From contig OX638150.1 of the NCBI GenBank assembly GCA_951804945.1, forward strand, positions 59,768,001 through 59,832,000: DNA of 64,000 bases. The letters are read 5' to 3'. The notes under the pieces are model-generated. The model was not told the DNA's origin. It was given only the letters and a program-made list of their open reading frames with translations, and made no database searches. The first letter of the stretch is position 1; each line of letters starts with the position of its first letter. This DNA is from Podarcis cretensis. Lineage: Eukaryota. Positions 2,935 to 56,884 of this stretch are shown here, in pieces. A program made the translations under genes and the position numbers.

Positions 2935-3306
2935 ATGAAGAGGATCAGGCAGACAGCTAAAGCTGAAAATCCAGTTCTTCAAACACTACAGAGGACAAAA
3001 AAGCAGAAAACTGGTTTTTACAACACTCTGTTTGATACATCTCATCCTTTTACCTTGATGGACTGGGGAAGTCTGCCGCACCACGTAGTCTTGCACATCT
3101 TCCAATGCCTGCCTCTTGTTGATCGTGCCCGTGCATCTTCAGTTTGCCGGAGATGGAATGAAGTGTTCCATATTCCTGATCTCTGGAGAAAGTTTGAATT
3201 TGAGCTTAATCAGCCTGCTACTTCATACTTGAAGTCTACTCACCCAGATCTTATTCAACAGATTATTAAAAGACATGCTGATCATTTGCAGTATGTCAGC
3301 TTCAAG
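2935..3306 (+). CDS. FBXL21: FBXL21 first coding exon (N-terminus and F-box)
   Basis: Translates MKRIRQ...[51 protein letters not shown]...LQYVSFK, an F-box of the FBXL21/FBXL3 family. The LPHHVVL and [10 protein letters not shown] motifs favour FBXL21. Donor AAG|GTAAAG at 3306/3307; 372 nt, phase 0. Confidence 0.95.
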
Positions 3307-3847
3307 GTAAAGAAGCCTCTTTTGTGTTCTAGTAATAATTAAGAATATTTTATGTACATTGAATTTTAGATTATGTATTTGTCAATTTTAAAGAAACTTA
3401 CTTGTTTAGGCTAGTGTTTACTGTTTTTTTTAAGTGTAGAAATATCAAATAGAAATGTGCTGGCAACTGCAAGTTTTCTATGTCTCCAATTCTTATCTTC
3501 CCAGGGAAACCAGTGTTAAGAGATAATGTGGGCATCTCCTGGATTCAGGATACTTTTTGTTGTTGTTAATTAGGTAGGGTTTACTTTTCAAATGCACCTT
3601 CAGCATTATTTCTTTACCAATTTCAGTAAGTGAAGTATAGTGTATTTACCACCTACTTGGAGCATTTCAGGTAGAAATGAAAAGTAGAGAGCCTGAAACC
3701 AAGGAGATTCAATTTCAGATTTTGGACCAATCACAATCTCTTGGCTTAACCTACTTCACGGTGTTCTTGTGAAGGTAAAGGAATAGATTTTCTACATCAC
3801 CTTGAACCAATTTGGAGAAAGGGTAATACTGTAATAGCTTCAGGTTA

Positions 3848-19939: not shown

Positions 19940-21889
19940 TACAATGGAAGTGTGCAACTTTAGGGGTGAAGTCAAACTGTTGGAAGATTGCAGCGTCTGC
20001 TGTGGCTGTAGAGACTGATACGGGACAGACATGTTTTGTTGCAGCAGGGGCAGATGAAGGCATCTAGTTGCATGCTGATGATGTACCGTGGTTTTCCTTC
20101 TCTTTGTGCTCCTCCCAGCAGTCCTTCCTCCTCTGGTTACTGCTGGTTACTCTGGTTACTCCTCTGGTTACTGCGTGACCTGGCAGTCTGTGAGATCTGT
20201 GGGGAAGTTAAGTGTGCCTAAATTCTAGGAACTTCAGCTTGTCAGAAGCTGCATTTTACTGAATCAGGTATTTGGTCTAACTCAATATTATCTACGCTAC
20301 AGACAAAGGTGTCTCCAGACCTGTCTGGAGATGCCAGGAATTGAACTTAGAACCTTCTGCATACAAAAAAGATACTGTATGGTTCAGCTATGGCCCTTCT
20401 GTAGAATTCAATAGGACATTAACTGTGTGTTAAAGGCTATTTGATGTCCATGGGACTGCATCTTCAGTCAGACTGTTTGCTCAACTAGCCCCAGGCCATG
20501 ATTTTTCACCTGTTCCTTCTAAACTGGAGTGACCAGGAAAAGAACCCTGGAGCTTGCGCATGTCCCCCATGGTCTCAGCCACTGAAATAAGGTTCATGGC
20601 TCCATAACAGCCAATAATTCTGTGTGCGATCCCTCCCACACTTATGTCCTATGGAGCTCAGTGAGGCTTGCTTCCAAGGAAACACACACCAGATTGGGCT
20701 GCATTTCTCCTTTCCTTTTGTTGTCCTCTGATTCATATTTTTTTCCCTGCCTGCAAGAGATTGATTGCAGCTTTAATGAAGGGCCTGCTCTGTAGGAGGA
20801 CAGTGGCGCTGTTGATTTGCTAGATTAGCCAAACTCAATTTATTTCCCAGGAAAAAAGTATTGGTATTTCCTTTATACGTGGGTTTAATTTCCTCACTTT
20901 CAACATGGATTAAGAATCAGCCCTGTCACGTCCAAGTTGCTCTGCCTCGTCTCCCTGTGAGTGGCTAAATGCACATTTTTATCCATTTTAAACAACACTA
21001 TGATCCACCAGTATCTTAAAGCTAAATCATGATATGAATAACATGCGGAGCCGGTCACCAACATTAACCATGTATGATGAGATCACTTCCAGTAAACCCT
21101 TGAAATATAGTAATGTGAGAAACATCTGGATGATGTGCACTTGCACTGCGCTGCACTTGATTTAAACTTGGAAGCCTTGGACCAAGGGGGATGATGTATT
21201 TATTCATAACTTATGCTCTTTTCTGGAGGTTTCCATGCAATCGACTCATTAGACATCAAAAGCTGGGAACGTCTTGGACTTCTTGGTTCACATTATTTTA
21301 CAATTCCCATTCTGCTTTAATATATTTTCTAAGTGGGCCCATTACATATCCCACTGCTTGTACTGCAAGGAGTCCAAATAACTGACTTCCAAAAGATGAA
21401 GCATTGCAAAAAACATGCAAGTAGCAGGCATTTGCTGACCGTGTTCATGTGAGGGTAAGTTAAAGGAAGAGTTTATTGTCCTAACTCCTTGAGTCTTTAA
21501 CAGATGTGGCTTTTCTTCAAGACCCCTTGCTGACCTCCCACAGGTTGAACAGACCATGCCACTGCTGCCTATCACACGCTCAGCTGAGGGCTTTGGAACA
21601 GGAAGTCACAGACACAGATTTTTGAGCCATCATTGAGATAAAGTGGGAAAAGATGAACTGGACTTAGCTTTCGGTTGACCACAAAATAGGGTTCAGGAAT
21701 GTTCATAACTTGCAATTCCCATGGGAGAATGATCTCTGAATTTCCACGTTTTATGTGGAACAGAGCTGAAGGGCTGCACAATATCTATCAGGAGCAGGGC
21801 CTTTTCATTTTGGACACCAACCTAGGCTGCCAATCTCAGAAACCAGGCTGAATCTTACTGGGTTGAATCTTACTGGAGGTATAAGGGAT

Positions 21890-22465
21890 GTTAAGGGAGC
21901 AGCAGTACTTCTGTACATCGTGCTCCTTCTAGAGTAGTTTGTCCGCTTTTGGACTCCACCCTGCACTCAGCTCACACCTTTGTCTCCTAGAAGCCAACAG
22001 CATGTGACAGTGGCCACAACCTTGGAAACAGCTTCAACTGGCTGGCTAAATCAGGTTAAGGTAGCTGATGGGTCTCAAATTCTTCCCCTGCGTGTGAAGA
22101 CAGGCTCTGGCGGATGGAGTGGACAAGACCAATACTGGGTCCAATGGTCAAAGAGGTGGTTTCAGTGGAGGGAAATTAGGGGACAATGGCGCTTGTCAAC
22201 CTAGGAAGGTAGCATATCTAGGAGAAGAAAAAGTTTGATACTAAACCTCCATTGCCTTGTGGGTATACTAATTCATGATAAAAATCTATACCCGCTGCCT
22301 TGCGGAACATCTTTAGGAGAAGGTAAGGCTAAGGAGTAAACTCTACACAAAGCCGGAACGGAGTTCCTAAGATGGTTGGATGGTGTCTTGTATGCCTCCT
22401 TCAGCAGTTTAACTGCACCCCTAGAGGTGCACTCCATTGTCTCTCAAGACAGATGGATGCCAATA
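21890..22465 (+). mobile_element. Probable RTE-clade LINE 5'UTR-derived non-autonomous element
   Basis: Contains CTAGGAGAAG-AAAA..TGATA.TAAACC and ends GACAGATGGATGCCAA, resembling RTE 5' regions. Family assignment is from memory. Confidence 0.45.
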
Positions 22466-23535
22466 TCTCTTTAGGGGCATTTGATCGACATTACTTATTT
22501 TAATGATAGGTTTTAATTGCCATTTTCATAATAGCTTGGGTTGTTGAGGTATCATTTTTTCACAGCCAGTATTCTTTCAAACACCCAAACATTTCATGCC
22601 ATCTATGTGTGCAAATGGGATGATGAGCTCAAGGTTCTTTCATGTTGTGCTTTAACTTTCTTTATGTACCCATTATTTAACTATCTAGTGAAAAGTATAT
22701 ACTTCTGGCTTATGCTGTTCTTCTGTGTTCTGCATGGGCCATGCGAGACTAAGGTTGGCCTCCATATTCTAGAAGGAATTGCTCCAAAGGGCAACGAGGT
22801 CAGTGTTGTATCTGTGTGATTGTTGCTTCCAAACAGAAAAATGTACACAATATATTAGAGGAATGGCAGTGCAATGCATTGGTTACCATGGGAATTATGA
22901 TGTTTAGCAAACTGTACTATGGAAAGTTCTTAGTCAACGGCCAAAGGCCATGAGGCTTATTTAGTACAGATCCTGGCACTTCCTTAACAAACCTGCCTTC
23001 TGACTTTTCTTTTCTTAAATGTGGAAAATACTGAAAGCTTTTCTTTTCAAGTACTATACTTAACAGAGGGGAAACTTGCTGAAAAGACAAACGGTATATT
23101 TTCATTTGTACCTTTATACAAATGGGACAAATTAGATGTTCATGGGAGTGATTCTTTACATTTCAGCCAATGAGGTTTGTGCATGGTTTAATGCAATGGA
23201 TAGTGTTATTTTAATGCATGGAGTTTAAGCTTTGTGTGTGAAACTGGTGCAGACGAATCACATCAAGCCAGCTTCCTCCTCACCCTTCCACCTGCACTTT
23301 GAGAAGTGGCCTGTGATGGATCACGATAGGTGAATCTATCAGTTTGGGTTTCTCTCAGTTTCTTAGTTCTGCACATTTCTACATAAATTTGAGAATTTTT
23401 ATTTATAACATGCTCATGAAAAACCACCAGCAGTTTAGTTCAGTTTTCTCCCAGTATACACATAGTAAAGCATATTTTCCCTAATATTTATATTTCCCCT
23501 ATTATAATATATTTTGTATGTTATCTTTGCTAATA

Positions 23536-23777
23536 CAGTGGTACCTCTGGTTACGAACTGAATTCATTCCGGAGGTCCATTCTTAACCTGAAACCGTTCT
23601 TAACCTGAGGTATCACTTTAGCTACTGAGGCCTCCCACTGCTGCCACGCCGCTGCCGCATGATTTCTGTTTTCATCCTGAGGTAAAGTTCTTAACCCAAG
23701 GTACTACTTCTGGGTTAGCAGAGTCTGTAACCCAAAATGTTTGTAACCCGAGGAGTTGGTAACCTGAGGTACCACTG
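23536..23777. mobile_element. Tc1/mariner-type MITE (family of 616-832)
   Basis: TA|CAGTGGTACCTC...GAGGTACCACTG|TA, with internal TTCTTAACC repeats. Confidence 0.87.
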
Positions 23778-24809
23778 TATGTGTATTTTTATGCAAACTT
23801 CCCCTTTGTATGTGAATTTTTGTACACATGACTTGGCTGCAAAATTCAGAGAAATGTGAAATTTCAGAAGATGGCTGTATTTTGGTTTGCAGAGAGTTTT
23901 GAACACATCAAATTCAGTAGGTTTGCCTTTTAATGCAAAGCAAATGGAATTTCTCCCCCACGCCTACGCTCTGATCCATGTAGTAGGAACACAACCCTAT
24001 ACCGTTTACTCCTTTGTATTTATATTCTGTGTACTCCACAAGACTCTGTGAAGCTTCTATCCATAAAAATATATCAAACAAAACAAAATACAGAAGCTGC
24101 TAACTACGTTATCCTGCAGGAGGTGGAGGCAGTGGAGAAAAATGAGATAAAATGTATAAAATAATTTTTTTTAAATCTCATAAGAGTTTTACAATAAATG
24201 CAAATGATTTAACAGGAGTTATTTTTGCCGCTTCATTGAGTTTTACTGTTTACTATATTGGCTGTTTGCAGAACCCTGCTATAATCTACTAACAGTTGGA
24301 GGTATATATATTTTAACCAGGAAATGGACAGAGCAGCCCTAACGATGATCAGAGAGGAGGAGCTACTGCCGCATTGGAGGGGGAGGGTGCCTTTTTTGCT
24401 GCACTAGCTTCAGGCTAGCATGACTGAAGGTGCTGAATCAGGTCCCCTCCAGGAGTTAGACAGGCATATGATCCAATGGATCAATGGCCAGGCCAGTCCT
24501 GCTCTGGCCCCACCACTGGATCTTACCCATTTCAGGATTTTACCCTGGTGGTATCCTCCCACGCATTTGGGCATAGTCAGGCCTCTGCTTCACAGGGAAG
24601 GGGAAGGCAGCCTAAGCAAGCATTCTGTGATTAAACTTCCTGGCATGCATCAAATGTGTTCCCAGCCATGTGTACCAGCCCATGCACACACTCTGATATT
24701 TAAGTGTTCTAGCTTAAAAATAGCATGCTAATCCTCCCTATTGTTACCTTAGAATTTTTTGAAAAGTCAGCAAGCTTTGGGTCCCTTGGGTAAAGCGTTC
24801 CAAATATCC

Positions 24810-25060
24810 CGAGTCACCACTGCAAAGGCCCTGCTCCACAGAGACATATATACCCCAATTCTAAGCTGAGTATGTTCTTATGCTTGGAGAGGTGTATGAG
24901 AGATCCAGGCTTAAAGGTGAGCAACAGCACCTGAAATGCTCCCAAAACCTTATGATAGGCCAATGCAGTTGCAAGGGACTGGTTAAATATGCTAACTTCA
25001 GCAAATTGTAAAAAACAAACCAACAGACCACCACATTCTGTGCCAGCTGCAGCTCCACCC
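24810..25060 (-). mobile_element. Degraded L2 ORF2 C-terminal remnant
   Basis: Frames read LQLHWPI and FQVLLLTFK, matching the L2 motif LHWLP..FK.L.LTFK. Confidence 0.55.
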
Positions 25061-26406
25061 CATGAAAAGTCAGTATGGAGGAGCACAGACATTTTTTCCT
25101 GTACAGAGAGCAGGAAAATAATTAGATATGAAGCAGCCCCAAAGAATAGAGTCTGCATGAACAGGCAAGGTTGAAGAATGACAGATCTCTAGCAGAAACC
25201 TGGCACAGCAAAGGTATAATTACAAAGCTATGAACAAAGTAATCCCAGATTAATCATTCTATTTAATCATGACCCATCCTTAAAAAAATAGTAGTAGTAG
25301 GATCTGGAACATGTAATTCCACGTATGTGGTGATTTTCGAAAGCTTCATAAAATTAGGGCTGCGCACATAACTGTGGGGCCGTTGGCCAAGGTTGGGACA
25401 ATTTGATTAGTCAAATGAGGTTTGGTTAGGCAAACTGAAAAAGGCAATACTTTTAAATAAATCATGGGTGGGGAAAGACAGGGCACTGAACTGTCAAGGG
25501 GAAAGCATGTGGGTAGCAAAGGCATGTCTGGGATCGCTTGATGAGCCTTCACAATATAAGGATTGGTGCTTTTTTGCTGTTGATTTGTTTATATGCAACA
25601 CAACAAATCAGAGGCGCTTCCTACATTTGATGGGCCAACTGCATAACCTCTGAAAGGAGAATAACATGAATAAATATATGGTCTCCTTGGTGCCCATACA
25701 CATTGCTAGTCAAAGTATTAGACTAATAAGGATTTGTATTATATTATGGAGCCGCTGGCGATCCCTAGCACTGACCATTAATTACAATTGATGGACCCAG
25801 GACCATTTTTGACTGGAGGGTTTGCAGTCATTGGAGATTACTTTTCTCTCTGTGTTGCAACATATTCCCTTTGCACGCTCACTTAGAAGTAGGTCCCATT
25901 GTGTCCAGTGGAGCTTATTCCACAGAAACAAGGCAAGTAGGAAGTAAGCCCCATGGAGTTCTGTGGGAGTTCTTCCCAGGCCACATGAGCTGCGCAGGTG
26001 GGGGGCTGTGTTGTGGTCCTTTCTTCCCAGTGCTGCACACTGCTGCTGGTTACTAAGAGGAGAGGGGAGTGGACAGCAGGGCGCAGGTGCAGTGATGGAG
26101 AAAACCCAGCGCCCCCACCTCTGAGCCTATCCCAAGCTCATCACTGCCTTGCCGCCACCTCCCACACCTTGGTAACTGGCAGAATGGCATGACATTGGGA
26201 AGCTAGGATAAGCTAGGGAAGCCCAACAACACAGCTGTACCAAACCCTATTGCTCCCAGGTAAGGATGGGCAAGTAGAGCCATTTCTGTTTCTCTTGCTC
26301 TCTCGTTTTTCCTGTCCTCAGATCAGTTCTCCACCTCATTTCGTGATTTTTAAAAGTCCCCATAAAATTTAGTGCAAATTTCTCCTAATGTACACATTTA
26401 TGCAAA

Positions 26407-26507
26407 TCTGTATCTGAAGAAGTGTGCATGCACACGAAAGCTCATACCAAGAACTAACTTAGTTGGTCTTTAAGGTGCTACTGGAAGGAATTTTTTTATT
26501 TTGTTTT
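26407..26507 (+). mobile_element. Short Penelope-like insertion
   Basis: 12-bp TSD CATTTATGCAAA at 26395-26406 and 26508-26519. The body resembles squamate Penelope terminal-repeat sequence (recognised from memory) and carries a hammerhead motif. Confidence 0.7.
26410..26447 (+). ncRNA. Minimal type I hammerhead ribozyme motif
   Basis: Helix I GUAU/AUAC; core CUGAAGA (26414-26420) plus one extra A; helix II GUGUG-CAUG-CACAC; GAAA (26436-26439); palindromic AGCU mini helix III; cleavage triplet CUC, cut after 26443. Confidence 0.75.
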
Positions 26508-26718
26508 CATTTATGCAAAGCAATTTCCCCCGACGTAATGCGTTTCTCTGTGTTATTTTCACGGGTATATATGCATTTGTATGGGCACTTTATATTAGTA
26601 TATGCAGTTTTGCAGGCATTACCTGAGTGGGCAAATGCACCGCAAAATTCGGAGAAGTGCTCATTTGGAAAAAATGCTTGTGTTTCCATTCACATCTTGT
26701 TTTGTGATATGTGAATTA

Positions 26719-26960
26719 CAGTGGTACCTCAGGTTAAGTACTTAATGCGTTCCGGAGGTCCGTACTTAACCTGAAACTGTTCTTAACCTGAAGCACCACT
26801 TTAGCTAATGGGGCCTCCTGCTGCCGCCGCGCCGCTGGAGCATGATTTCTGTTCTCATCCTGAAGCAAAGTTCTTAACCTGAAGCACTATTTCTGGGTTA
26901 GCGGAGTCTGTAATCTGAAGCGTATGTAGCCTGAAGCGTATGTAACCCGAGGTACCACTG
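26719..26960. mobile_element. Tc1/mariner-type MITE
   Basis: TA|CAGTGGTACCTC...GAGGTACCACTG|TA, 242 bp. Confidence 0.9.
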
Positions 26961-27112
26961 TAGGTACGTTCACTTTCAAATGCAAATGGAATAGAATTTC
27001 TCCCTGCTCTTTAGGCCCAGCTGAGTGTGTGCAGATATACTCCCTAAGTCTTACATTAATTTCATTTGGAGTACTCTCTCTCTCCAATAAGAACATGGCA
27101 ATTAAACATATG

Positions 27113-27354
27113 CAGTGGTACCTAGGGTTACATACGCTTCAGGTTACATACGCTTCAGGTTACAGACTCCACTAACCCAGACATAGTACCTTGGGTTAAG
27201 AACTTTGCTTCAGGATGAGAACATAAATTGTGTGGCAGCGGCACAGCGGCAGCAGGAGGCCCCATTAGCTAAAGTGGTGCTTCAGGTTAAGAACAGTTTC
27301 AGGTTAAGAACAGACCTCCGGAACGAATTAAGTACTTAACCCGAGGTACCACTG
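27113..27354. mobile_element. Tc1/mariner-type MITE, inverted relative to 26719-26960
   Basis: CAGTGGTACCT...GAGGTACCACTG|TA, 242 bp, near reverse complement of its neighbour. Confidence 0.9.
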
Positions 27355-29292
27355 TATCTCTCATGCGCTTTATCTCTCATAGCCAGTGTCTCCTTTGTCA
27401 CATGCTTTTATCAAACGTGTTCCTATAGCCAGCTCTGCAGCCCCTCCAAGTTGTGTAGGGTACACCATTATCAAAACCTTAAACTTGGCCCGGTAATATA
27501 TTGGCCCTCTCATACCATTTGATCCGTTCCTACAATCTTGACCTGTGGTTGAGTCTAAAGCAGAGCAAAGATCTGCCATTTCCCAGTGAGAGGGAAGCTT
27601 CAGCCCATTTCATATGGAAAAAAGTAAAATCATCTATATACATTGGATGGGAGTGGCTTCTGTGGACTGTAAAAAAAAAAAAAGAGGTGGGAGAAGAAGC
27701 TGTGAAAAGGTTCTATACCCAAGGGATATAGACAATTACAAATGACAGCGTACTGGAAAGTATTTCTCCAGCCAAACAATCTGTAAATTTAGTCTGACTC
27801 ATCTGAAACCAGACTAACAAGATGAGTTACCTCTTGTAATAAAAGAGTCCAACACATAAATATTCTTTTCAAGTAGCCACATTACTCTATGCGTAAAACA
27901 TGTTTCAAAGCCTGCTGTGGGTATTTTCCATGAAAGTACAATCTAAGCACAATAATCCCAAGCTACTTTTGCTATGTAACATCTGCTCTCAATTTTCATG
28001 TGATTTATGTTACCATATTGAAAATAATATATAGGCTGAAAACCTAGCCTTGTGTTAAATAAAACCAAAAATTAACAAAATCCTTCATATTACTTCTTAT
28101 GCACCAAATGTGTGTGTTTTGCACATTTACAGTCTGTGTGTTGAGGTGTGTGTGTGTTTTGCTTTGCGACTTGTGTTCAATTAACTTGTGTTAATTGAAA
28201 TTGTTAGATAATTTTATGACAAGCTTTTGCATATAAAAACATTAAGGGGGCATATTTTGACATCATGCTTCAGTGCTGCTACTGCTGAGGGTCCTGTTTA
28301 TTTAGTGCAGCGGTGTGTGTTAAGAAGACTGATGCAGAGTGTTTCTGCAACAGCCTATAATCACTCTAAAGTCAACTTCACCATACATAGTTTATAATGA
28401 TTTAATGCCAGCTTACATGTCATGCCTTCCCCCAAGGAATCCTGGGAACTGTACTGTAGTTTGTTAGGGGTACTGAGAATTATTTCCAGGAGATCCTAAC
28501 CCAAGGAAGAAGAGTTCCTTGGAGAGAGAAGAGAAATGATGATTAAACTAGTAGTGTAGATATGCCCTGGAAAGGACATAGAAAGAGAATATGTTTGTTA
28601 TGTCTGCTGTCATGATTTCTTCATCCTCTTTCTTTCGTCATAGTCTCATATTGTTTATATTCAGCAGCCTTTACTGCTGCCACATCATGTTCTAATATTA
28701 TACAAAGAAATTGCTTACATCACTTCCTAAAATGGACACATGAGTTACCGTCTCACATTTACCCTTAATGGGTTCAGTTGGGGATGTAAATTAAAAGCAG
28801 TCCTTCAGATGCAGACTTCAATAGCACCAAGTCTTCTATTCTTGGAATGCAAATGGGTTGAGATTATAGATTGCATAATAACACGATCTGAATGTTTGTC
28901 TTGTTTTTTTTTTCTTTTTTAAACAAAAGACATTTATTAGACAGCGCTATGACATGTGCTTATGCTGAAAATAAGATGAAGGCATTCATGTGGTCCCGTG
29001 GCATTTTCCCAGAAAGTTGGGATTTAATGTTCTGTGTCCACAAATGAAATGAAAGGAACACATTAAATGGGAAATGGATGAGTTTCTCCCAATTGCTGTG
29101 TTACCAAAAGCTTCTGTACTGCGTTAGCAGTGATGTACTGAAATCCAAAGCACAATGGCTTCATACATTTAAAGCTCATTTCTGACTTCCATCCAAGAAT
29201 TCTGGGAACTGCAGTTTGTTAAAGGTGCTGGAAATTTTAGCTCTGGGAGGAATAAACTAGTTTTCATGATTCTTGGATGTGCATGCTCTTTA

Positions 29293-43995: not shown

Positions 43996-44105
43996 AGGAA
44001 CATAGCTCAGTCGGTAGAGTAGGAGACTCTTAATCTCATGGTTGTGTGTTCGAAGCCCATGTTGGGCAAAGGGGTCTAGAGTAGATGACCCTCTGCAATT
44101 CTAAA
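43996..44105 (+). mobile_element. tRNA-Lys(CTT)-derived SINE with a CR1-like tail (not a functional tRNA)
   Basis: TAGCTCAGTCGGTAGAG..GAGACTCTTAATCTCA..GTTCGA..CCCATGTTGGGC matches tRNA-Lys-CTT, but the acceptor and T stems are broken. It is followed by TAGATGACCCT, resembling the CR1 3' end (compare 34192-34203). Confidence 0.75.
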
Positions 44106-49127: not shown

Positions 49128-52100
49128 TTAACATTCATACAGTTTACAATATTTTTGCAGGTAAAGCTTAAATTTTTTCCAGTCCTCTTCAACGATTTCT
49201 TCTCCCAGGTCTCGGATTCTGCCAGTCATCTCAGCCAGTTCCATGTAGTTCATCAGTTGCATCTGCCATTCTTCCAGTGTGGGTAGATCTTGGGTTTTCC
49301 AGTGTTTAGCAGTAAGTATCCTTGCTGCTGTTGTTGCATACATGAAAAAAGTTCGGTCTTTCTTTAACACCCCTTGGCCGACAATACCCAAAAGGAAGGC
49401 CTCTGGTTTCTTAAGGAAGGTATACTTAAATACCTTTTTCAGCTCATTATATATCATTTCCCAGAAGACCTTCACCCTAGGACAGGTCCACCAAAGGTGA
49501 AAGAACGTTCCTTCATTTTCCTTACATTTCCAACACTTATTATCAGACAAGTGGTATATTTTTGCAAGTTTGACTGGGGTCATGTACCATCTATATATCA
49601 TTTTCATTACATTTTCTTTCAGAGCATTACATGCAGTGAAATTCAACCCAGTAGTCCACAACTTTTCCCAGTCCTCAAACATAATATTATACCCTATGTC
49701 CTGTGCCCACTTTATTATAGCCGATTTAACCATTTCATCTTGTGTGTTCCATTTTAACAGCAAGTTGTACATTCTTGAAAGTACCTTGGTCTTAGGCTCT
49801 AGCAATTCCGTTTCTAATTTCAATTTTTCCACCTGGAATCCTAATTTTTTATCAAGTTTAAAAACTTCTTTAATCTGGGCGTAGTGTAACCAATCTCTCA
49901 CTTTATCTTTCATTTTCTCCTGACTCTGCAATTTCCAATTGTCTCCTTCTTTTTCTAATATTTCCCAATACTTTGGCCATTTGGCCTCCATATTGAGTCT
50001 TTTTCGGGCCTTAGCTTCCAATGGTGAAAGCCACCTTGGAGTTTTATTTTCCAATAAGTCTTTATATTTTGTCCAAACATTAAACACTGCCTTTCTGACA
50101 ATATGGTTCTTAAAAGCCTTATGAATCTTAGCCTTATCGTACCATAGATATGCATGCCAACCAAACGCATTGTTGAAACCTTCCAAATCCAATACATCAG
50201 TGTCCTCCAGAAGTAGCCAGTCTTTTAGCCAGCAGAAAGCTGCTGCTTCATAATACAGCCTTAAGTCTGGCAGGGCAAAGCCCCCTCTTTCTTTCACATC
50301 AGTTAGTATCTTAAACTTGATTCTGGGCTTTTTGCCCTGCCAGACAAATTTGGAAATATCTCTCTGCCACTTCTGGAAGCATTCTGTTTTATCCACAATC
50401 TGTAATGTTTGAAACAAAAACAACATTTTTGGCAATACATTCATCTTTACAGCGGCGATTCGGCCTAACAAAGAAAGTTTCAATCTTGTCCAACTTTCTA
50501 GATCTCTCTTAATTTCTGACCAGCATTTCTCATAATTATCCTTAAACAGATTTAGATTTTTTGATGTTATATTTACCCCTAGGTATTTCACTTTTTTAAC
50601 CACATTTAACTCTGTCTCTTTCTGAAACCATTCTGACTCTGTATCTGTCAAGTTCTTTCCCAATACTTTAGTTTTCTGTTTGTTTAATTTAAATCCCGCC
50701 ACCCGGCCAAATTCTTGGATCAATTGTAATGCTTTTTTTGTACTTGGCTCTGGCTCCTGTAGGGTCAAAACTAGGTCATCTGCGAACGCTTTCAATTTGT
50801 ATTGTTTCTCTCCGACCTGAATTCCTTCAACCATCCGGTCCCCCCTAATCATGTTCAAGAGCACCTCCAAGACCGAAATGAATAACAATGGGGAGATAGG
50901 ACAGCCTTGTCGTGTTCCCTTTTCAATTTTAAACTCTTCCGTAATCACATTGTTAACTATCAGTTTAGCCTTTTGTTCTGAATAGATTGCCTCTATCCCA
51001 TTTTCAAAGCCCCGTCCCACTCCCATTCCTTCCAGATTTTTCTTCATAAATTTCCAAGAAATGTTATCAAAGGCCTTCTCCGCATCTATAAAAATTAAGA
51101 CTGCTTTTGTATTAATATTTGTTTGTAAAAGTTCCAAAATGTCAATAATATTCCTTGTATTAGCAAACAAATGTCTGCCAGGGAGAAAGCCAGCTTGGTC
51201 CTTATGAATTACTTCATTTAACACTTTCTTAAATCTAGTTGCTAATATGTCTGCAAATATTTTATAATCCACATTTAAACGGGAGATGGGGCGGTAGTTT
51301 TTAAGTTGTGTCTTTTCAGTTTCTGATTTTGGTATCAATGTGATAAAAGCTTCTTTCCACGTTTCCGGCGCCTTCTTCCCCTCCATAATTTCATTGCTGA
51401 CCTCCATCAGTGGTTGTATCAAGTAATCTTTCAATGTCTTATAGTACTTGGAGGTCAGCCCATCTGGCCCTGGAGATTTGCCCAATTGCATGTTCTGAAT
51501 GGCTTGTTCCATCTCTTGTCGTGTTATTCTGCTATTCAGGATTGATCTATTTTCTTGTGACACTTTTGGCAGCCCATTCTTTATCAGAAATTGTTCTATC
51601 TGTGCCTCATTTTGCGGACCTTGAGTATATAGTTGTTTAAAATACCTCTGAAAGCACTTTCTGATCTCCATGGGGTTCTGAACATTTTTCCCTTCAATCT
51701 CTAAATTGGTAACTGTATTCATTTTCTGTCTCCTTTTCAACTGCCATGCTAGCAGTTTCCCACATTTATTTGCCGATTCAAATGTTTTTTGTTTCATTAA
51801 TTTAATTCTCCATTCTATTTCCTGGTTCATCAATTTAGAATATTGTGCTTGGTATAATTTAATTTCTCTCAGAATCGGCTGTGACTTCGGGTTTGATCTT
51901 AATTTCTTCTCCAGTTCTTTAATTTTCTCCAAAATCTTGTCTTTTTTCTCATTTTGTGCCCTTTTCTTTACAGCATTCTGTTGTATCAAGAACCCCCTCA
52001 TCACTGCTTTACTTGCGTCCCAGATAGTTGTTTTTTTCCACTGAAGTGTTCAAATTTATCTCAAAATAGTGCTTCAAAACTTTTTGGGCTTTTTTAACAA

Positions 52101-52870
52101 TCTCCTGATCTCTGAACAAATTGTCATTCATCTTCCACCTAAAGGAGCCGGATGGTAGTAGTGTCATATCCATCTTTACAGCATTGTGGTCGGAAGAGGG
52201 TTTTTGGGCAGATTTCCACCTTTCTGGTCTTCGGTGCCAGGCCTCTAGATATCCATATTTGGTCTATTCTTGTCCATGTCAGCTGGGCTTCAGAAAAGAA
52301 CGTTCCTTCTCTTCCCAAGGGGTTTTTTGTCCTCCAAATGTCAATCAAGTCCATATTGTCAGTCAGTTGAAAAAAAGTCTTAGGTAGTCTGCCATCTTTT
52401 GATATATTTTGATTTTGTGACTTATCCATGTTGGTTGATACCACTCCATTCATATCTCCCATCATGATGATGTTATCATAGTCCAGATAGTCCAGGACGC
52501 TCTCATGCAACTTCTTGTAAAATTCTGATTTCCCCTCATTCGGTGCATAAATTCCTAATATCAAAAATTTCTCTCCTTGATGTTGTATCTCAATTGCCAC
52601 AATTCTTCCTTGTTCATCTTTGAATAAGAGTTTAGGTGCCAGGCTCTCCTTTGCATAAATCACCACTCCTCTCTTCTTTACTTTGTCCGAAGAGATAAAT
52701 TCTTGGCCTAATCTTTTGTTAATTAACACTTTCCTATGGAGCCTGGTCACATGTGTATCTTGCAAATAGATAATGTCCAATTGTTCCTTTTTTAATATAT
52801 GAAATATCTTCCTCCTTTTTTCCGGGGAGTTACAACCATGAATATTCCAGCTCAAAAGTTGCAGAGACAT
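49128..52870 (-). pseudogene. L1 ORF2 (APE endonuclease, reverse transcriptase, CCHC), disrupted by two +1 frameshifts
   Basis: EN motifs SWNIHG, IYAPN, GDMN, RIDQIW and SDH; RT motifs KSPGPDG, GTRQGCPISP and FADD; C-terminal CWKC..H....C. Extra bases at ~52195 and in the T7 run 52031-52037; removing both gives 1246 aa. Confidence 0.9.
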
Positions 52871-52884
52871 CCTGGATAAATCTG

Positions 52885-53937
52885 TTATTGTTCTGGTGGT
52901 GGTGTCTTTTTTTCTGGGTCTCCAGGTTCTGGGGGTGAAGGTACAGCCGATGCTCCAGGCCCAAAGGGTGTTTCAATTCCTTTCTGAAGGTCCTCTCCGT
53001 GAACAATCAATAATTTGTCTCTGTCCTCAAGTGTTTTGATTTTAACCTTCTTCCCTCTGAAAGTGAAAGATAATCCCTGGGGAAATTCCCACCTAAAGAT
53101 GATTGAATTACTCCTTAACAATCCAACCAGTTCAAGGTAGGCGGATCTAAGATCCAACAGTTGTTTCGGGATATCTTTGTAAATTTCAGCCCTTTTATCC
53201 AAAATGTCCAGTGACTTTTCGTAGTGTAAGCCTAATATCTTGTCCCTTTCCTCCTTTGATCTCAAAATTATCAAGCAGTCTCTGGGCTTGTCTTTTCTTG
53301 CAAATTTTCCAAGTCTAAAAGCCGATATAATTCTAAAGTCCTTTTCCTCTTGGATAGGCCAGAACTTGGTAAATTCTTTGGTCAGGAACTCAGCTAAGTT
53401 ACCTTCTTCAACCTCTGGTATTGACCTTAATCTTAAATTACTTTCCCGATTCCGCAATTCTAGCATGGACAGATACGTCTGGTGCCCTTCGACTTGTTTG
53501 CAGAATGGTTTTACCTCTTGTTCTAAATTTTCAACTTTTTGGCTGGTTGCCTCAGCTAATTTGCGATTTTCAATAGTGGCCTCAGTTAATTCTCCAATTG
53601 CTTGTACATTCTGTGCTACCTGTCCAGTTATTTTATTTAGACAGGCTGTGTTTTGATCTATTTTAGCTGTTTGTTCATCAGCTTTCTTGTCCAAAGATTC
53701 CACTCTCTTGTCCAAAGATTCCAATTTTTCATATATTTTCTCTAAAATTGCAGCAGTTGCTCCTGTGGCCATATCTTCCAATTGTAGCTGCTCTGTTCCT
53801 TCTTCCAACGGCAGCACAGGCACACTTTCTTGTCCCCCTGCTGAGGGCAAAGTAGGTACAGAAGATCTACGTGTCTGTAAAGCTGAGGTTAGGGTTGTTT
53901 GTCTAGTTCTTGGTCCTCTTCTTCTTGTACCGCTCAT
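52885..53937 (-). CDS. L1 ORF1 protein (coiled coil plus RRM/CTD), 350 aa, intact
   Basis: Heptad-rich coiled coil (LEKIYEKLESLDKRVESLDKK) followed by RNRESNLRLRSIPE, the typical start of the L1 ORF1 RRM. Ends 14 nt upstream of the ORF2 ATG. Confidence 0.88.
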   Translation of the reverse strand: MSGTRRRGPRTRQTTLTSALQTRRSSVPTLPSAGGQESVPVLPLEEGTEQLQLEDMATGATAAILEKIYEKLESLDKRVESLDKKADEQTAKIDQNTACLNKITGQVAQNVQAIGELTEATIENRKLAEATSQKVENLEQEVKPFCKQVEGHQTYLSMLELRNRESNLRLRSIPEVEEGNLAEFLTKEFTKFWPIQEEKDFRIISAFRLGKFARKDKPRDCLIILRSKEERDKILGLHYEKSLDILDKRAEIYKDIPKQLLDLRSAYLELVGLLRSNSIIFRWEFPQGLSFTFRGKKVKIKTLEDRDKLLIVHGEDLQKGIETPFGPGASAVPSPPEPGDPEKKTPPPEQ

Positions 53938-56884
53938 TCCAAGTTTATCTCTGAGTCAAGGTCAAATTCAGATGTTCCCATGGGAATACAGCAGCCCCAG
54001 AGCACCGTCGAATAGGAGGAAAGGAAAGAGAAAGTAAAATAGTGTCACTGCTGTAAGCCCAAAATCCTCTAGGGGGGGCTTCAAATTTCTTATTGAGAGA
54101 AGCCGGAACAAAAATAAAAATAAACAGGCTAATAAAGTTCAGTTTATCCAAAGACCTTCTGTAGTTAAAATTTAGCAGAGTTGGTGTTAACAGTGTTACA
54201 GTGATTCTGACAAGTACCGGCTGATGATTCAAAGTAGCAAGTTCAAATGCCCTAGATTGTTGCAAGTCCAGTTTTAAAGTAGCTAAGTCTGCAAACTGAC
54301 AGCTCTGTTCCTGGCAGCCCAAGTATCTGGGCTTCACAGTCAATAAATTGTAATCCAAAAGAAGAGGATAAACACAGTCCATATAAAGAGTAAATCATGT
54401 AGTTAACTTGTGCCCTTTCTTTACGTAAAAACAATTTCAATGGGTGCTCAAAACAGTCTATTTAAAAGCCTCTTTAACGACTCCACCTCCAGCTCTTTTG
54501 CTTTGAAGTTTAAATAGCAGTGGAAGACGGACTTCCTGTTCTCCTCGCTCCGCTTTTAGCCAAATTTCCTCAATTTTAGGTTCAAATTGTAAAGGTCCTT
54601 TCTTACTCACGGGTTGTTGCCTTCTAATTCGAAAATTTTTCAGGAAGAAAGGTCAGCGCTCACCGACAGCAGCTGCGCGGCTTCGTTCCGCAGAATAGCG
54701 ATTGACTCACAGCGCCGCAACCCCCTCTACGATCAGAAGCTCCTTACGGGGTCTCCTCTCCGTTTTAGGGGCCGCTTCTGGCACCCGCCGAGTCCCACGT
54801 CCTCAGGCTCTTGCTGCCTGAGGTTTTTCGGTGCGGGTCTCCGCTTTGCCGTAGCGGACGACCCGTTTCTGCGGAGCTTCCTCCTCAGCAAGCAAGGAGG
54901 ACCGCCATTGTCGTTCGCGCCGCCTCCGGAAGTCCATCTTGACGACTTCTATCTAAGTAGTGTGGTTCATTATTAACCCATCAAGGATATGTTGATTTTG
55001 CAGTGTCCCAAGCACAGCGGAATGATGAGGAGTACGTGCCACATACTCTATATTACTTTATTTACACTTCAAAGCTGGTAGATTACAGAAAAACATCTTG
55101 CCTATGCCGGAGCAGAGAAAGCATCCTCTCTCCTCTAAAGCACAGAGAGAACACAGTGAGAACAGTGAAAAACAGGAAACCAGTGTACGTCACATCCAGT
55201 CTCCTTTCCCGTGGGAAAACCCAACAGCACAGACTGTGGAATGTAAACACCTGTCTCGTGACAAGCACTTCGCTGCACAGTGAAGAGAGCAGAAAACCAA
55301 CAGGATAATGCCCACTAGCATTTTTTAAAACAACAACAACACCCACCCACCCACCCACAAATTAACTTAAAAACAAGGAAACAACTGGATGAAATTAAAT
55401 ACACAACTATCAAGGGCAAGTAGTTCTGATAGCCAGAAATGCTCCTTCTATGTCATAGATCAGGTATTTGGAATTGACATTGCTCGTTTCCTGCCTTTCT
55501 TCCAAGGAGTTTAGGGGAGCATTTTATCCTCCTAACAGTTTGGTGGTGCAGGCTAGGCTGAGAGATAATGATTGCCCAAAGCCAACAAGTAAGCTTTGTA
55601 GCTAAGGGAAGATTTCAATATGGGCTTCCCACATCCTATCCCAGCACTGTATCATTGTTAACACAGGGACTAGATTCTGTATCTTGGTTAGATCCTGCGT
55701 TAACCACTGTTTTATCATCACCTTTCCTCACTCATAGTCACCCACACACTTACTCGGTAGTATAAGATTCATTTCACTTTGTTGTTGTCCCATCATGTTG
55801 TGGTGTTGTGTGTGAATATCCCAAACAGATGGGTGGAACTGGTCACTTGAATGCCGACTTTTTAATATGAAATACCAATGCAGTCAGCTCAGTCCACATC
55901 ATTGCTTCATTTTTGCTCTTTCCTTCTTTCTCACACACGTCACTATGAGATTCCTATCACAGGGTGAAGGGGAAAGAAAAGCACTCCTCATGCAAGTAGC
56001 TCATCCTTCTATTGTTTTGCCCCCTGTGGTTACTTGAAGGAAAGGCCCTTTTCACATTACTTGGTGTTTTTCATCGTTATCATCAGTCAGCTTATTCACA
56101 AGCAATGCTAAGCCAAAACCATAGCTTGGTGCAAATGCGTGTGTGCAGGATCCCATAGAGAGCTGCTTTGCTCCTCTGGTCCTGCTGTTGTGATGTAAAG
56201 CCATGGTGTGTTATCTGAGCCAAAGTTTATGGTTTGTCGCATTCCCCACAAACCATGGGCTGTTGCCAGGATTTGCCTTTGAGTTTACAATGGCCAAGAT
56301 CTCCTCTCTGGGAACCTTCACACTTTTGCATTTGTGTCAAGCCGCACAGAAGCCTTCTCCACCCCCAGTCTGTCTCTGTCTCTGTCTCTGTGTAAACTGT
56401 TCCCCATGAGCGTCCTTCTATCCATGAGTGATGAACTTTGATGCAGGAAGGTAGCAGGCAGGCTCTCTTCCAAGCCCCTGTCAATCAGCTGTCCTCCATA
56501 TCCTTTTCCTCATCAAAACTGAAGTAGAGTTAATTTAAATTGGATGAAAATTTCTTCCTAAGTTATAACTCACATTCACTCACACACTCACTCAGGGGAT
56601 CACTTGCCCTAGTGGAAATATACAAAGTTCGAACGCATTCAAAGGAAGGGTGCAATAGAGGTGGAGGAAATCTAACCTGGCTTAGTGAAGAGAAAGGTCT
56701 TTCACATTTCAGCTTCATTTATGATTTATATTCTGATCTCATGGAAATTTAAACTGTGGGGGTAATGATTCCTTCTTTATAAATACAGTGCTTCTTTTAG
56801 GACTTATTATTTACAAGACGTCTTTGAATGCCAGGGTATGTATAGGGAACTCAATATATATATTTTTCTCTCCTTTACCTGTAG

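What the first reader, a model, noticed from the sequence alone, without database searches (positions are those of the whole stretch)
26395..26519. A ~100-bp mobile insertion that is essentially just a hammerhead ribozyme
Seen: a 101-bp insert flanked by a perfect 12-bp TSD (CATTTATGCAAA). Three bases in, it carries a complete minimal hammerhead: helix I GUAU(26410-13)/AUAC(26444-47), core CUGAAGA plus one extra A, helix II within the perfect 14-nt palindrome GTGTGCATGCACAC, GAAA, then AGCU and a cleavage site after C26443. Known: Penelope-like retroelements carry minimal type I hammerheads whose helix III is a short palindrome and which are thought to cleave as dimers; an extra nucleotide between A9 and G10.1 occurs in natural hammerheads. 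Inference: this is either a severely truncated Penelope repeat or a member of a tiny non-autonomous ribozyme-only (retrozyme-like) family. Both helix II and helix III are self-complementary, so copies could pair in trans.
Basis: partly seen in the sequence, partly recalled or inferred. Interest (0 to 1): 0.8.

Follow-up and report, generated by a model that had tools for sequence, protein, structure and literature searches.

The report
Short Penelope-type insertion carrying a hammerhead
This is a real, recent 101-bp insertion in a lizard genome, but it is an ordinary short end-piece of a very abundant Penelope-type jumping element, whose built-in hammerhead ribozyme motif sits about 100 bases from the end where copying starts, so the ribozyme comes along as baggage.

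Summary
A 101-bp insert (26407-26507) lies between perfect 12-bp repeats (CATTTATGCAAA). It carries every conserved base of a minimal type I hammerhead (26410-26447). Single contigs from two related species cross the site without the 113 bp and keep one copy of the 12-mer, so this is a true lineage-specific insertion with a real target-site duplication.

The insert belongs to a huge family, roughly 10^5 copy-equivalents by k-mer depth in three species. Some other copies run on 3' of 26507 into a shared AC-rich stretch of at least 27 nt. Some run on 5' of 26409 into a shared sequence. That matches Penelope-like elements (PLEs): frequent 5' truncation, an optional "tail", an AT-rich target, and a dimer-type minimal hammerhead at the pLTR/ORF junction just upstream of the internal reverse-transcription start sites (PMC11167929, PMC4209133, PMC8557442).

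The "severely truncated Penelope repeat" reading is supported. The "ribozyme-only mobile family" reading is not, though I could not plot the 5' ends of copies genome-wide. The monomer cannot form helix III and there is no second copy in the 64 kb, so this copy is probably catalytically silent. The scan has already noted many Penelope-type hammerhead insertions elsewhere in this genome. This is an ordinary member of a known kind.

The parts
26395..26406 (.). Left copy of the 12-bp target-site duplication CATTTATGCAAA (AT-rich target, contains ATT)
   Evidence: One search gives the sequence; the empty-site contigs of organisms B and F keep one copy, with 12 letters fitting both sides of the 113-base skip.
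26407..26507 (+). The 101-bp insert: a solo, 5'-truncated, tail-less copy of a very high-copy Penelope-type family
   Evidence: absent in B and F and present in A. 17,292 contigs of X1 lie on it. Summed word depth is 6.6-8.0 million over 26421-26488, against about 96 in the single-copy flank; there is no other copy in the window.
26407..26409 (+). TCT at the 5' junction. T26409 may be element sequence. TC has no assigned origin (extra junction bases or diverged element sequence).
   Evidence: loose ends: one class of contigs aligns from 26409 and is preceded by a shared ...CTTCTGTTTCAG. Another class aligns from 26410 and is preceded by heterogeneous AT-rich sequence.
26410..26447 (+). Minimal type I hammerhead motif. 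Its pieces are: helix I 26410-13/26444-47 (4 bp), C3-A9 CUGAAGA 26414-20, unpaired A 26421, helix II palindrome 26422-35, G12-A14 and A15.1 at 26436-39, helix III palindrome AGCU 26439-42, C17 at 26443. Predicted cleavage is between 26443 and 26444.
   Evidence: no variant at 10% or more among family copies at 26414-26442, and C26443 is T in about 14% of copies, which still satisfies H17. Cleavage itself was not tested.
26448..26507 (+). 3' module of the family, up to the point where this copy ends. It holds a weak hairpin (26445-26477) followed by a T-rich tract. By inference it corresponds to the stretch between the hammerhead and the first internal RT start site.
   Evidence: depth is as high as over the hammerhead. 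Family variants occur at 26449, 26451, 26455 and 26470. Other copies continue past 26506/26507 with (C)GACTAYGGCAGACCAACACGGCTACC; the fold is no better than shuffled sequence.
26508..26519 (.). Right copy of the 12-bp target-site duplication
26353..26403 (.). The host site is itself part of an older, moderately repeated sequence (roughly 10^2 copies) into which the element inserted
   Evidence: depth is about 20,000-25,000 over 26370-26403 against about 96 in single-copy sequence. A shared upstream consensus stands at 26368 (agreement 0.68). Paralogous contigs replace 26390-26507 by about 30 other letters (table 5c).

Best explanation
The insert is a solo, severely 5'-truncated, tail-less copy of a very abundant Penelope-like (PLE-type) retroelement family of this lizard lineage.

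Inferred mechanism, by analogy with the Anolis element PAc:
1. A PLE RT/GIY-YIG endonuclease protein, bound to a family transcript, nicked an AT-rich site.
2. It began reverse transcription inside the RNA, at the upstream of the family's start sites (template base 26507). Hence this copy has no tail.
3. It copied back through the uncleaved hammerhead.
4. It stopped or switched just 5' of helix I.
5. A second nick 12 bp away produced the CATTTATGCAAA duplication.

In PLEs the hammerhead sits at the pLTR/ORF junction, about 100 nt upstream of the RT start. Any copy truncated to about 100 bp therefore consists of the ribozyme plus the 3' priming module. The ribozyme is baggage of the element and not the reason the piece moved.

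As a monomer it cannot form helix III, because AGCU is four contiguous bases. No partner lies within 64 kb. This copy is therefore probably inactive unless it pairs in trans.

Shown here: the insertion, the duplication, the empty site, family size, the 3' and 5' continuation in other copies, and the motif.
Inferred: the enzyme, the RT start point, and catalytic silence.
For: Insertion and TSD:
- orthologous empty site in two species, a 113-base skip with 12 shared letters.

Family:
- 17,292, 7,923 and 9,455 contigs were laid in three species.
- The ratio of element depth to flank depth is about 0.8-1.2 x 10^5.
- 4,842 of the X1 contigs are at least 99% like this copy, so the subfamily is young.

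Tail:
- loose ends behind 26506/26507 share (C)GACTAYGGCAGACCAACACGGCTACC. Agreement is up to 0.71 in X17.
- In other classes the shared sequence decays into AT-rich sequence after 6-15 letters, which means several 3' end points.

5' continuation:
- loose ends before 26409 share ...CTTCTGTTTCAG in all four runs.

Motif:
- Searches match the PLE min-HHR hallmarks listed in PMC4209133. That paper also says most such motifs occur as single elements 'probably related to truncated PLEs'.

Geometry:
- In Poseidon_Ac the cut is at nt 29/30 and the tail spans nt 85-119 (PMC11167929; sequence).
- Here 26507 lies 64 nt past the cut.
- In PAc, unprocessed RNA is the dominant template and the endonuclease prefers AT-rich sites containing ATT.

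PLE hallmarks (5' truncation, optional 30-40 bp tail): PMC8557442.
Against: - No PLE ORF (RT plus GIY-YIG) with this 3' end was found. The window has none: the big ORFs at 49-54 kb are a LINE.
- I saw no clear nucleotide similarity to Poseidon_Ac. That comparison was by eye only, because the consensus has no reference to hand to an aligner.
- A class of contigs has heterogeneous AT-rich sequence directly 5' of 26410 (agreement 0.36-0.38). Depth is nearly flat from 26421 to 26488. Both would also fit many copies starting near the hammerhead's 5' edge.
- This copy shows none of the tandem or inverted arrangements typical of PLEs.
- No Rfam hammerhead model matches, and cleavage is untested.
Confidence: 0.8

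Rival explanations
1. A discrete, SINE-like, ultra-short non-autonomous family (hammerhead plus about 60-nt 3' module, about 100 bp) with its own defined 5' end at about 26409/26410. It would be mobilised in trans by a PLE enzyme, so the 101 bp would be close to the full unit and not a truncation.
For::
- About 10^5 copy-equivalents, far more than autonomous PLEs usually reach.
- Depth rises only about 20% from 26421-37 to 26472-88, so most copies contain the whole hammerhead.
- A loose-end class at 26410 has heterogeneous AT-rich upstream sequence in all three DNA runs.

(bioRxiv 10.64898/2026.07.22.740005): vertebrate retrozyme families with consensus lengths down to 51 bp and many monomers are described as PLE derivatives.
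Against: -: another class of copies continues 5' with a shared sequence, and many continue 3' with the tail, so 26407-26507 is not the family's full extent.
- The apparent boundary at 26409/10 is forced by the reference copy ending there. Unitig ends are not element ends.
- In PAc the RT needs RNA down to +172, beyond the tail. A copy ending at the RT start should therefore be unable to template new copies.
Confidence: 0.12
2. A retrozyme-type element that spreads through a circular RNA made by hammerhead cleavage and ligation, with this copy being a monomer left by that cycle.
For: The hammerhead is type I with a palindromic helix III, as in metazoan non-LTR retrozymes (PMC7229834, listed). 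A few contigs in X1 show back-joints within the element (tables 5 and 5c).
Against: - The insert runs 34-37 nt upstream of the cleavage site and does not start at 26444, so its template was not cut there.
- There is no tandem array here.
- There is no marked depth step at 26443/26444.
- In PAc no RNA ends were found at the cleavage site.
Confidence: 0.03
3. A host-selected ribozyme (for example one acting on a pre-mRNA), or a chance motif beside a chance repeat.
For: All conserved core bases are intact.
Against: - It is absent from two related species, so it is not a conserved host feature.
- The chance expectation for the motif is 0 in 300 shuffles.
- The 12-mer is shown to be a duplication by the empty sites.
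- It is one of about 10^5 similar sequences.
Confidence: 0.02

Closest known systems
Minimal (dimer-type) hammerheads of metazoan Penelope-like elements (Cervera & De la Pena 2014, PMC4209133; Lunse, Weinberg & Breaker 2017, cited through PMC6765202)
   Same: Type I topology. Helix I of 4 bp and a long helix II. An unpaired base between A9 and G10.1, and a G10.1-C11.1 pair. No helix III hairpin, only a palindrome (AGCU) that can pair between two copies. Occurrence as dispersed single motifs in very large numbers.
   Different: Helix II here is a perfect 14-nt palindrome, so ViennaRNA predicts that two copies pair through helix II as well. I did not find whether that is described for other families. 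The exact sequence was not found in the paper library.
Poseidon_Ac (PAc), the Penelope/Poseidon element of Anolis carolinensis (Frangieh et al. 2024, PMC11167929)
   Same: The same layout is readable: CUGAGGA, one extra base, helix II, GAAA, palindromic ACGU, C17. Internal RT start sites bracket an AC-rich tail 55-90 nt after the cut. The target is AT-rich. Uncleaved RNA is used as template.
   Different: A different family at the nucleotide level. This was compared by eye only, because the PAc consensus has no reference to give to an aligner, so that step was left out. In PAc the start codon is A9-U-G10.1. Here the only AUG lies in the helix II loop (26428-30), and its frame closes after 9 codons in this copy. 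No RT/EN ORF was linked to this family here.
Non-LTR retrozymes of animals (Cervera & De la Pena 2020, PMC7229834; Li, Clavereau & Pollet 2026, bioRxiv 10.64898/2026.07.22.740005)
   Same: Short, non-coding sequences bearing a type I hammerhead and related to PLE pLTRs. Monomer derivatives are common. Reptile families average 176 bp.
   Different: Retrozymes are defined by tandem units and circular RNAs. This is a single unit with its own TSD. It spans the cleavage site and is not bounded by it.

Membership tests
PLE minimal hammerhead (min-HHR) | Conserved core: C3 U4 G5 A6 N7 G8 A9, G12 A13 A14, A15.1-U16.1, H17 | tested here: met
   CUGAAGA, GAAA, A26439/U26442, C26443; the descriptor hit is unique in the window, with 0 hits in 300 shuffles.
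PLE minimal hammerhead (min-HHR) | Extra base between 9 and 10.1; G10.1-C11.1 pair; long helix II; short helix I (PMC4209133) | tested here: met
   A26421, G26422-C26435, helix II of 5-6 bp within a 14-nt palindrome, helix I of 4 bp.
PLE minimal hammerhead (min-HHR) | No stable helix III; palindromic 15.2/16.2 that allows a dimer | tested here: met
   AGCU 26439-42; no intramolecular helix III is possible, and dimer structures are predicted.
PLE minimal hammerhead (min-HHR) | Self-cleavage (as a dimer or with protein help) | not testable with these tools
   This needs in vitro transcription and cleavage assays. The contig data cannot show RNA ends.
Rfam hammerhead families (type I, type III, II, HH9, HH10) | A covariance-model match at or near the gathering score | tested here: not met
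   no hammerhead family is listed, even at E<=10 on 321 bases. My reading, which was not tested, is that these models include a helix III hairpin that this motif lacks.
Penelope-like element insertion | Target-site duplication at an AT-rich site | tested here: met
   a 12-bp TSD proven by empty sites. The target CATTTATGCAAA contains ATT, the PAc cleavage preference.
Penelope-like element insertion | An optional 30-40 bp tail at one end in a fraction of copies (PMC8557442, PMC11167929) | tested here: met
   some copies continue past 26506/7 with a shared AC-rich stretch of 27 nt or more, and other copies end earlier. This copy has none. The full tail length was not measured, because loose ends are shown for 30 letters only.
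Penelope-like element insertion | Widespread 5' truncation from a longer unit | tested here: inconclusive
Penelope-like element insertion | An autonomous partner encoding a telomerase-like RT and a GIY-YIG endonuclease with the same 3' end | not tested
   There is none in the window; the only RT is part of a LINE with an APE-type endonuclease. No access to the rest of the genome.
Penelope-like element insertion | Partial tandem or inverted arrangement (pLTR) | tested here: not met
   this is a solo copy. Solo truncated copies are also described for PLEs (PMC4209133), so this does not exclude membership.
Non-LTR retrozyme | Tandem units bounded by hammerhead cleavage sites; circular RNA | tested here: not met
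   no tandem array. The insert spans the cleavage site. Circular RNA is not testable here.

The most novel reading that the evidence does not exclude
The roughly 100-nt unit (dimer-type hammerhead plus about 60-nt priming module) is a discrete, SINE-like mini-parasite of Penelope elements with its own fixed 5' end at 26409/26410. It would have amplified to about 10^5 copies and still been active after this lizard lineage split from its relatives. The family-wide perfect 14-nt palindrome in helix II would then let dispersed transcripts pair into domain-swapped double hammerheads.
Probability: 0.12. Interest if true: 0.55.

Novelty: new member of a known kind. Interest (0 to 1): 0.2.

Why it matters
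It matters only modestly. The copy is a clean natural example of what Penelope-like elements leave behind. It has a proven empty site in sister species, a 12-bp duplication and an AT-rich target. Its 3' end lies where the Anolis in vitro work places an internal reverse-transcription start, but in a different family. It extends upstream of the hammerhead cleavage site, so it was copied from uncleaved RNA.

It also shows that this family was still inserting after the species split, and that it makes up roughly 10^5 copy-equivalents in three related species. For annotation, it warns that intact-looking hammerheads in lizard genomes are overwhelmingly transposon baggage and not host ribozymes.

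Tried and rejected
- Rfam at gathering score and at E<=10: no hammerhead hit. I do not count this against the motif, because my understanding is that those models require a helix III hairpin.
- Second copy in the window, or a paralogous empty site, by blastn-short and nhmmer and by pattern searches: none found.
- Monomer fold of the whole insert and of its 3' part: no better than shuffles, so there is no evidence for a special structure beyond the motif.
- Literal sequence search in the paper library and in JGI metagenome contigs: nothing. Neither collection is expected to hold lizard repeats, so this says little.
- Earlier-findings look-ups by place and by sequence: blank.
- Lunse et al. 2017 (PMC5785218) is not held. 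It is cited only through the review PMC6765202.
- Computational alignment to the Poseidon_Ac consensus was left out, because that sequence has no reference and long letters may not be typed. Only its layout was read by eye.
- I built no consensus of the family and did not read the short frame from AUG 26428 through its stop.
- Rejected ideas: a SINE with a poly(A) tail (the A-rich end would be at the 5' end of the minus strand); precise deletion in relatives instead of insertion (the boundaries coincide with those of a 10^5-copy family); a host ribozyme (absent in relatives).

Full report
**Observation**

One search shows CATTTATGCAAA at 26395-26406 and again at 26508-26519, with 101 bp between them. 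Three bases into the insert the sequence reads GUAU-CUGAAGA-A-GUGUGCAUGCACAC-GAAA-GCU-C / AUAC (26410-26447).

Every conserved hammerhead position is present:
- C3-A9
- G12-A14
- A15.1 and U16.1
- C17

Helix I has 4 bp. Helix II lies in a perfect 14-nt palindrome. One base (A26421) stands between A9 and G10.1. Helix III is only the palindrome AGCU.

My own descriptor of such a minimal hammerhead finds this one site on both strands of the 64 kb. It finds none in 300 Markov-1 shuffles. The literal pattern is expected 0.00 times. Only 1.3% of random sites in the window are bracketed by an exact direct repeat of 12 nt or more within 150 nt.

Rfam gives no hammerhead match, even at E<=10. I read that as a limit of models that I understand to include a helix III hairpin, and not as evidence against the motif.

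**Is it an insertion?**

Yes. I laid Logan contigs of four public runs on 26200-26700.

- Organism B: one 2,792-nt contig covers 26200-26394 and continues without a break at 26508-26697.
- Organism F: one 2,805-nt contig does the same (record positions 2371-2568, then 2569-2761).
- Both skip 113 bases, with 12 letters that fit either side. This is the orthologous empty site with a single copy of the 12-mer.
- The flanks of B and F differ from the window by roughly 2-4%.
- Organism A has flanks identical to the window (0 differences in 198 nt and 1 in 216). A contig there runs from 26485 inside the insert to 26700, and no empty-site joint was seen, so the insert is present.

The 12-mer is therefore a true target-site duplication. 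The insertion is younger than the split of A's lineage from B and F.

The target lies inside an older, moderately repeated sequence. Depth over 26370-26403 is about 20,000-25,000, against about 96 in single-copy sequence.

**What the insert belongs to**

The same call shows a huge family.

| Run | Contigs laid | Depth over 26421-26488 | Single-copy flank depth |
|---|---|---|---|
| X1 | 17,292 | 6.6-8.0 million | 96 |
| X4 | 7,923 | 2.0-2.8 million | 22 |
| X13 | 9,455 | 4.8-5.0 million | 47 |

This gives about 10^5 copy-equivalents. The tool warns that this figure is not a copy number, so I use it only as an order of magnitude.

In X1, 4,842 contigs are at least 99% like this copy, so it sits close to a young subfamily.

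No variant reaches 10% at 26414-26442, the stretch from the core through helix III. C26443 is T in about 14% of copies, which is still a permitted H17. Downstream, 26449, 26451, 26455 and 26470 vary in 12-51% of the depth.

**The ends of other copies**

Behind 26506/26507 many contigs run on with a shared (C)GACTAYGGCAGACCAACACGGCTACC. Agreement is 0.71 in X17. In other classes the shared sequence fades into AT-rich, heterogeneous sequence after 6-15 letters. The family therefore has several 3' end points and an AC-rich optional extension that this copy lacks.

Before 26409 one class shares ...CTTCTGTTTCAG in all four runs, which shows a longer element. Before 26410 another class has heterogeneous AT-rich sequence.

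The reference copy itself ends at these points, and unitigs break inside repeats. These data therefore cannot give a 5'-end histogram.

**Comparison with what is known**

Cervera and De la Pena (PMC4209133) describe minimal hammerheads in the pLTRs of metazoan Penelope-like elements. These have a long helix II, a helix I of 4-5 bp, a conserved extra base between 9 and 10.1, G10.1-C11.1, and palindromic 15.2/16.2. They are found mostly as dispersed single motifs "probably related to truncated PLEs", with low activity even as dimers. All of these features are met here.

Craig et al. (PMC8557442) list the structural hallmarks of PLE insertions:
- heavy 5' truncation
- partial tandem or inverted copies
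- a 30-40 bp tail at one end

Frangieh et al. (PMC11167929) studied the Anolis element PAc. They report that:
- reverse transcription starts inside the RNA at two sites that bracket the tail (nt 85-119 of the ORF);
- the hammerhead straddles the pLTR/ORF junction, with its cut at nt 29/30;
- uncleaved RNA is the main template;
- the endonuclease prefers AT-rich sites with ATT;
- RNA down to +172 is needed for activity.

In the PAc consensus printed I read the same layout by eye: CUGAGGA, one extra base, helix II, GAAA, palindromic ACGU, C17. There the tail lies 55-90 nt after the cut. Here the insert ends 64 nt after the cut, and the tail of other copies adds at least 27 nt.

I did not align the two sequences by program. 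The PAc consensus has no reference, and long letters may not be typed.

**Mechanism (inferred)**

1. A PLE protein nicked the AT-rich site.
2. It primed cDNA synthesis at template base 26507.
3. It copied back through the intact hammerhead.
4. It stopped just 5' of helix I.
5. A second nick 12 bp away gave the duplication.

In PLEs the hammerhead lies about 100 nt upstream of the start of reverse transcription. A copy truncated to about 100 bp therefore necessarily looks like "just a hammerhead" plus the priming module.

The insert reaches 34-37 nt upstream of the cleavage site, so its template was not cut at this ribozyme.

By analogy with PAc, a copy ending at the RT start lacks the downstream RNA that the enzyme needs. 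If so, it is dead on arrival. This argues against self-propagating 101-bp units.

**Activity**

As a monomer the RNA can form helices I and II (-6.8 kcal/mol for that structure; MFE -7.6) but not helix III. For two copies, ViennaRNA predicts pairing through the 14-nt palindrome of helix II (-32.2 kcal/mol, against 2 x -7.6). That would give a domain-swapped arrangement. This is a prediction only.

There is no second copy within the 64 kb and no tandem array. Cleavage in cis is therefore unlikely.

Run X17 (organism G, guessed to be RNA) holds only the element and not the flanks. That does not show expression of this copy.

**Rivals**

- A discrete, SINE-like short family cannot be excluded. 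The evidence that fits it is the flat depth, the AT-rich class at 26410, and the very high copy number. I put it at about 0.12.
- A retrozyme/circRNA origin does not fit an insert that spans the cleavage site and stands alone.
- A host ribozyme is excluded by absence of the insert in relatives.
- Chance is excluded by the shuffles.

**Limits**

- No autonomous partner was identified. The only RT in the window belongs to a LINE with an APE-type endonuclease.
- Covariation and cleavage are untested.
- I built no family consensus, and I did not read the short frame from AUG 26428 (closed at 26455-57) through its stop.

**Earlier findings and verdict**

Earlier notes of this scan list many Penelope-type hammerhead insertions of various lengths and shapes in the same lizard genome. 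Several were judged ordinary by follow-up agents. My result agrees with them.

This is an ordinary member of a known kind, with a well documented recent insertion.

Noticed in passing
window 26709-27364: A fold-back about 200 bp downstream of the insert. It has two 252-nt arms, 90% complementary, 152 nt apart, built from repeated CAGTGGTACCTCAGGTTAAGTAC-like units. My descriptor finds no hammerhead motif in it. It looks like a different (MITE-like or inverted-duplicate) repeat.
   Followed up: no
window 49128-54382, minus strand: A LINE-type retrotransposon. A 958-aa ORF carries RVT_1 (E 2.7e-37), and an adjacent 243-aa ORF carries an Exo_endo_phos (APE-type) endonuclease domain (E 1.3e-09). 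Two further ORFs upstream (350 and 145 aa) have no Pfam match. The ORF2 region is split into separate frames, so the copy is probably broken.
   Followed up: partly
window 2935-3342, plus strand: A 135-aa ORF with an F-box domain (F-box-like, E 7.9e-15), probably an exon of an F-box protein gene. If that gene continues downstream on the plus strand, the hammerhead would lie on the sense strand of an intron. This was not checked.
   Followed up: no
window 44001-44064, plus strand: A borderline tRNA match (Rfam RF00005, 29.5 bits against a gathering score of 29, with mispaired acceptor and T stems). It is more likely the head of a tRNA-derived SINE or a pseudogene than a working tRNA.
   Followed up: no
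window 26353-26403 and 26508-26675: The sequence the element landed in is itself repeated (about 10^2 copies by depth). It has roughly 30-nt units of the type TGCAAATTTCCCCTAATnnnCA. Paralogous contigs carry a different ~30-nt unit where this locus has the insert.
   Followed up: partly
window 26409-26444 (other copies of the family, run X1): Two single contigs join 26409 or 26411 to 26444 or 26443 on opposite strands. In those copies one arm of an inverted junction begins at the predicted hammerhead cleavage site. The support is too thin (one contig each) to interpret, but it is worth a look in a genome-wide census.
   Followed up: no
window 26455: The only AUG of the motif (26428-30, in the helix II loop) opens a frame that closes at TAA 26455-57 in this copy. 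Position 26455 is one of the most variable in the family (about 44% of depth differs). In the Anolis PLE the ORF starts inside the hammerhead, so part of the family may be coding there. I did not pursue this.
   Followed up: no
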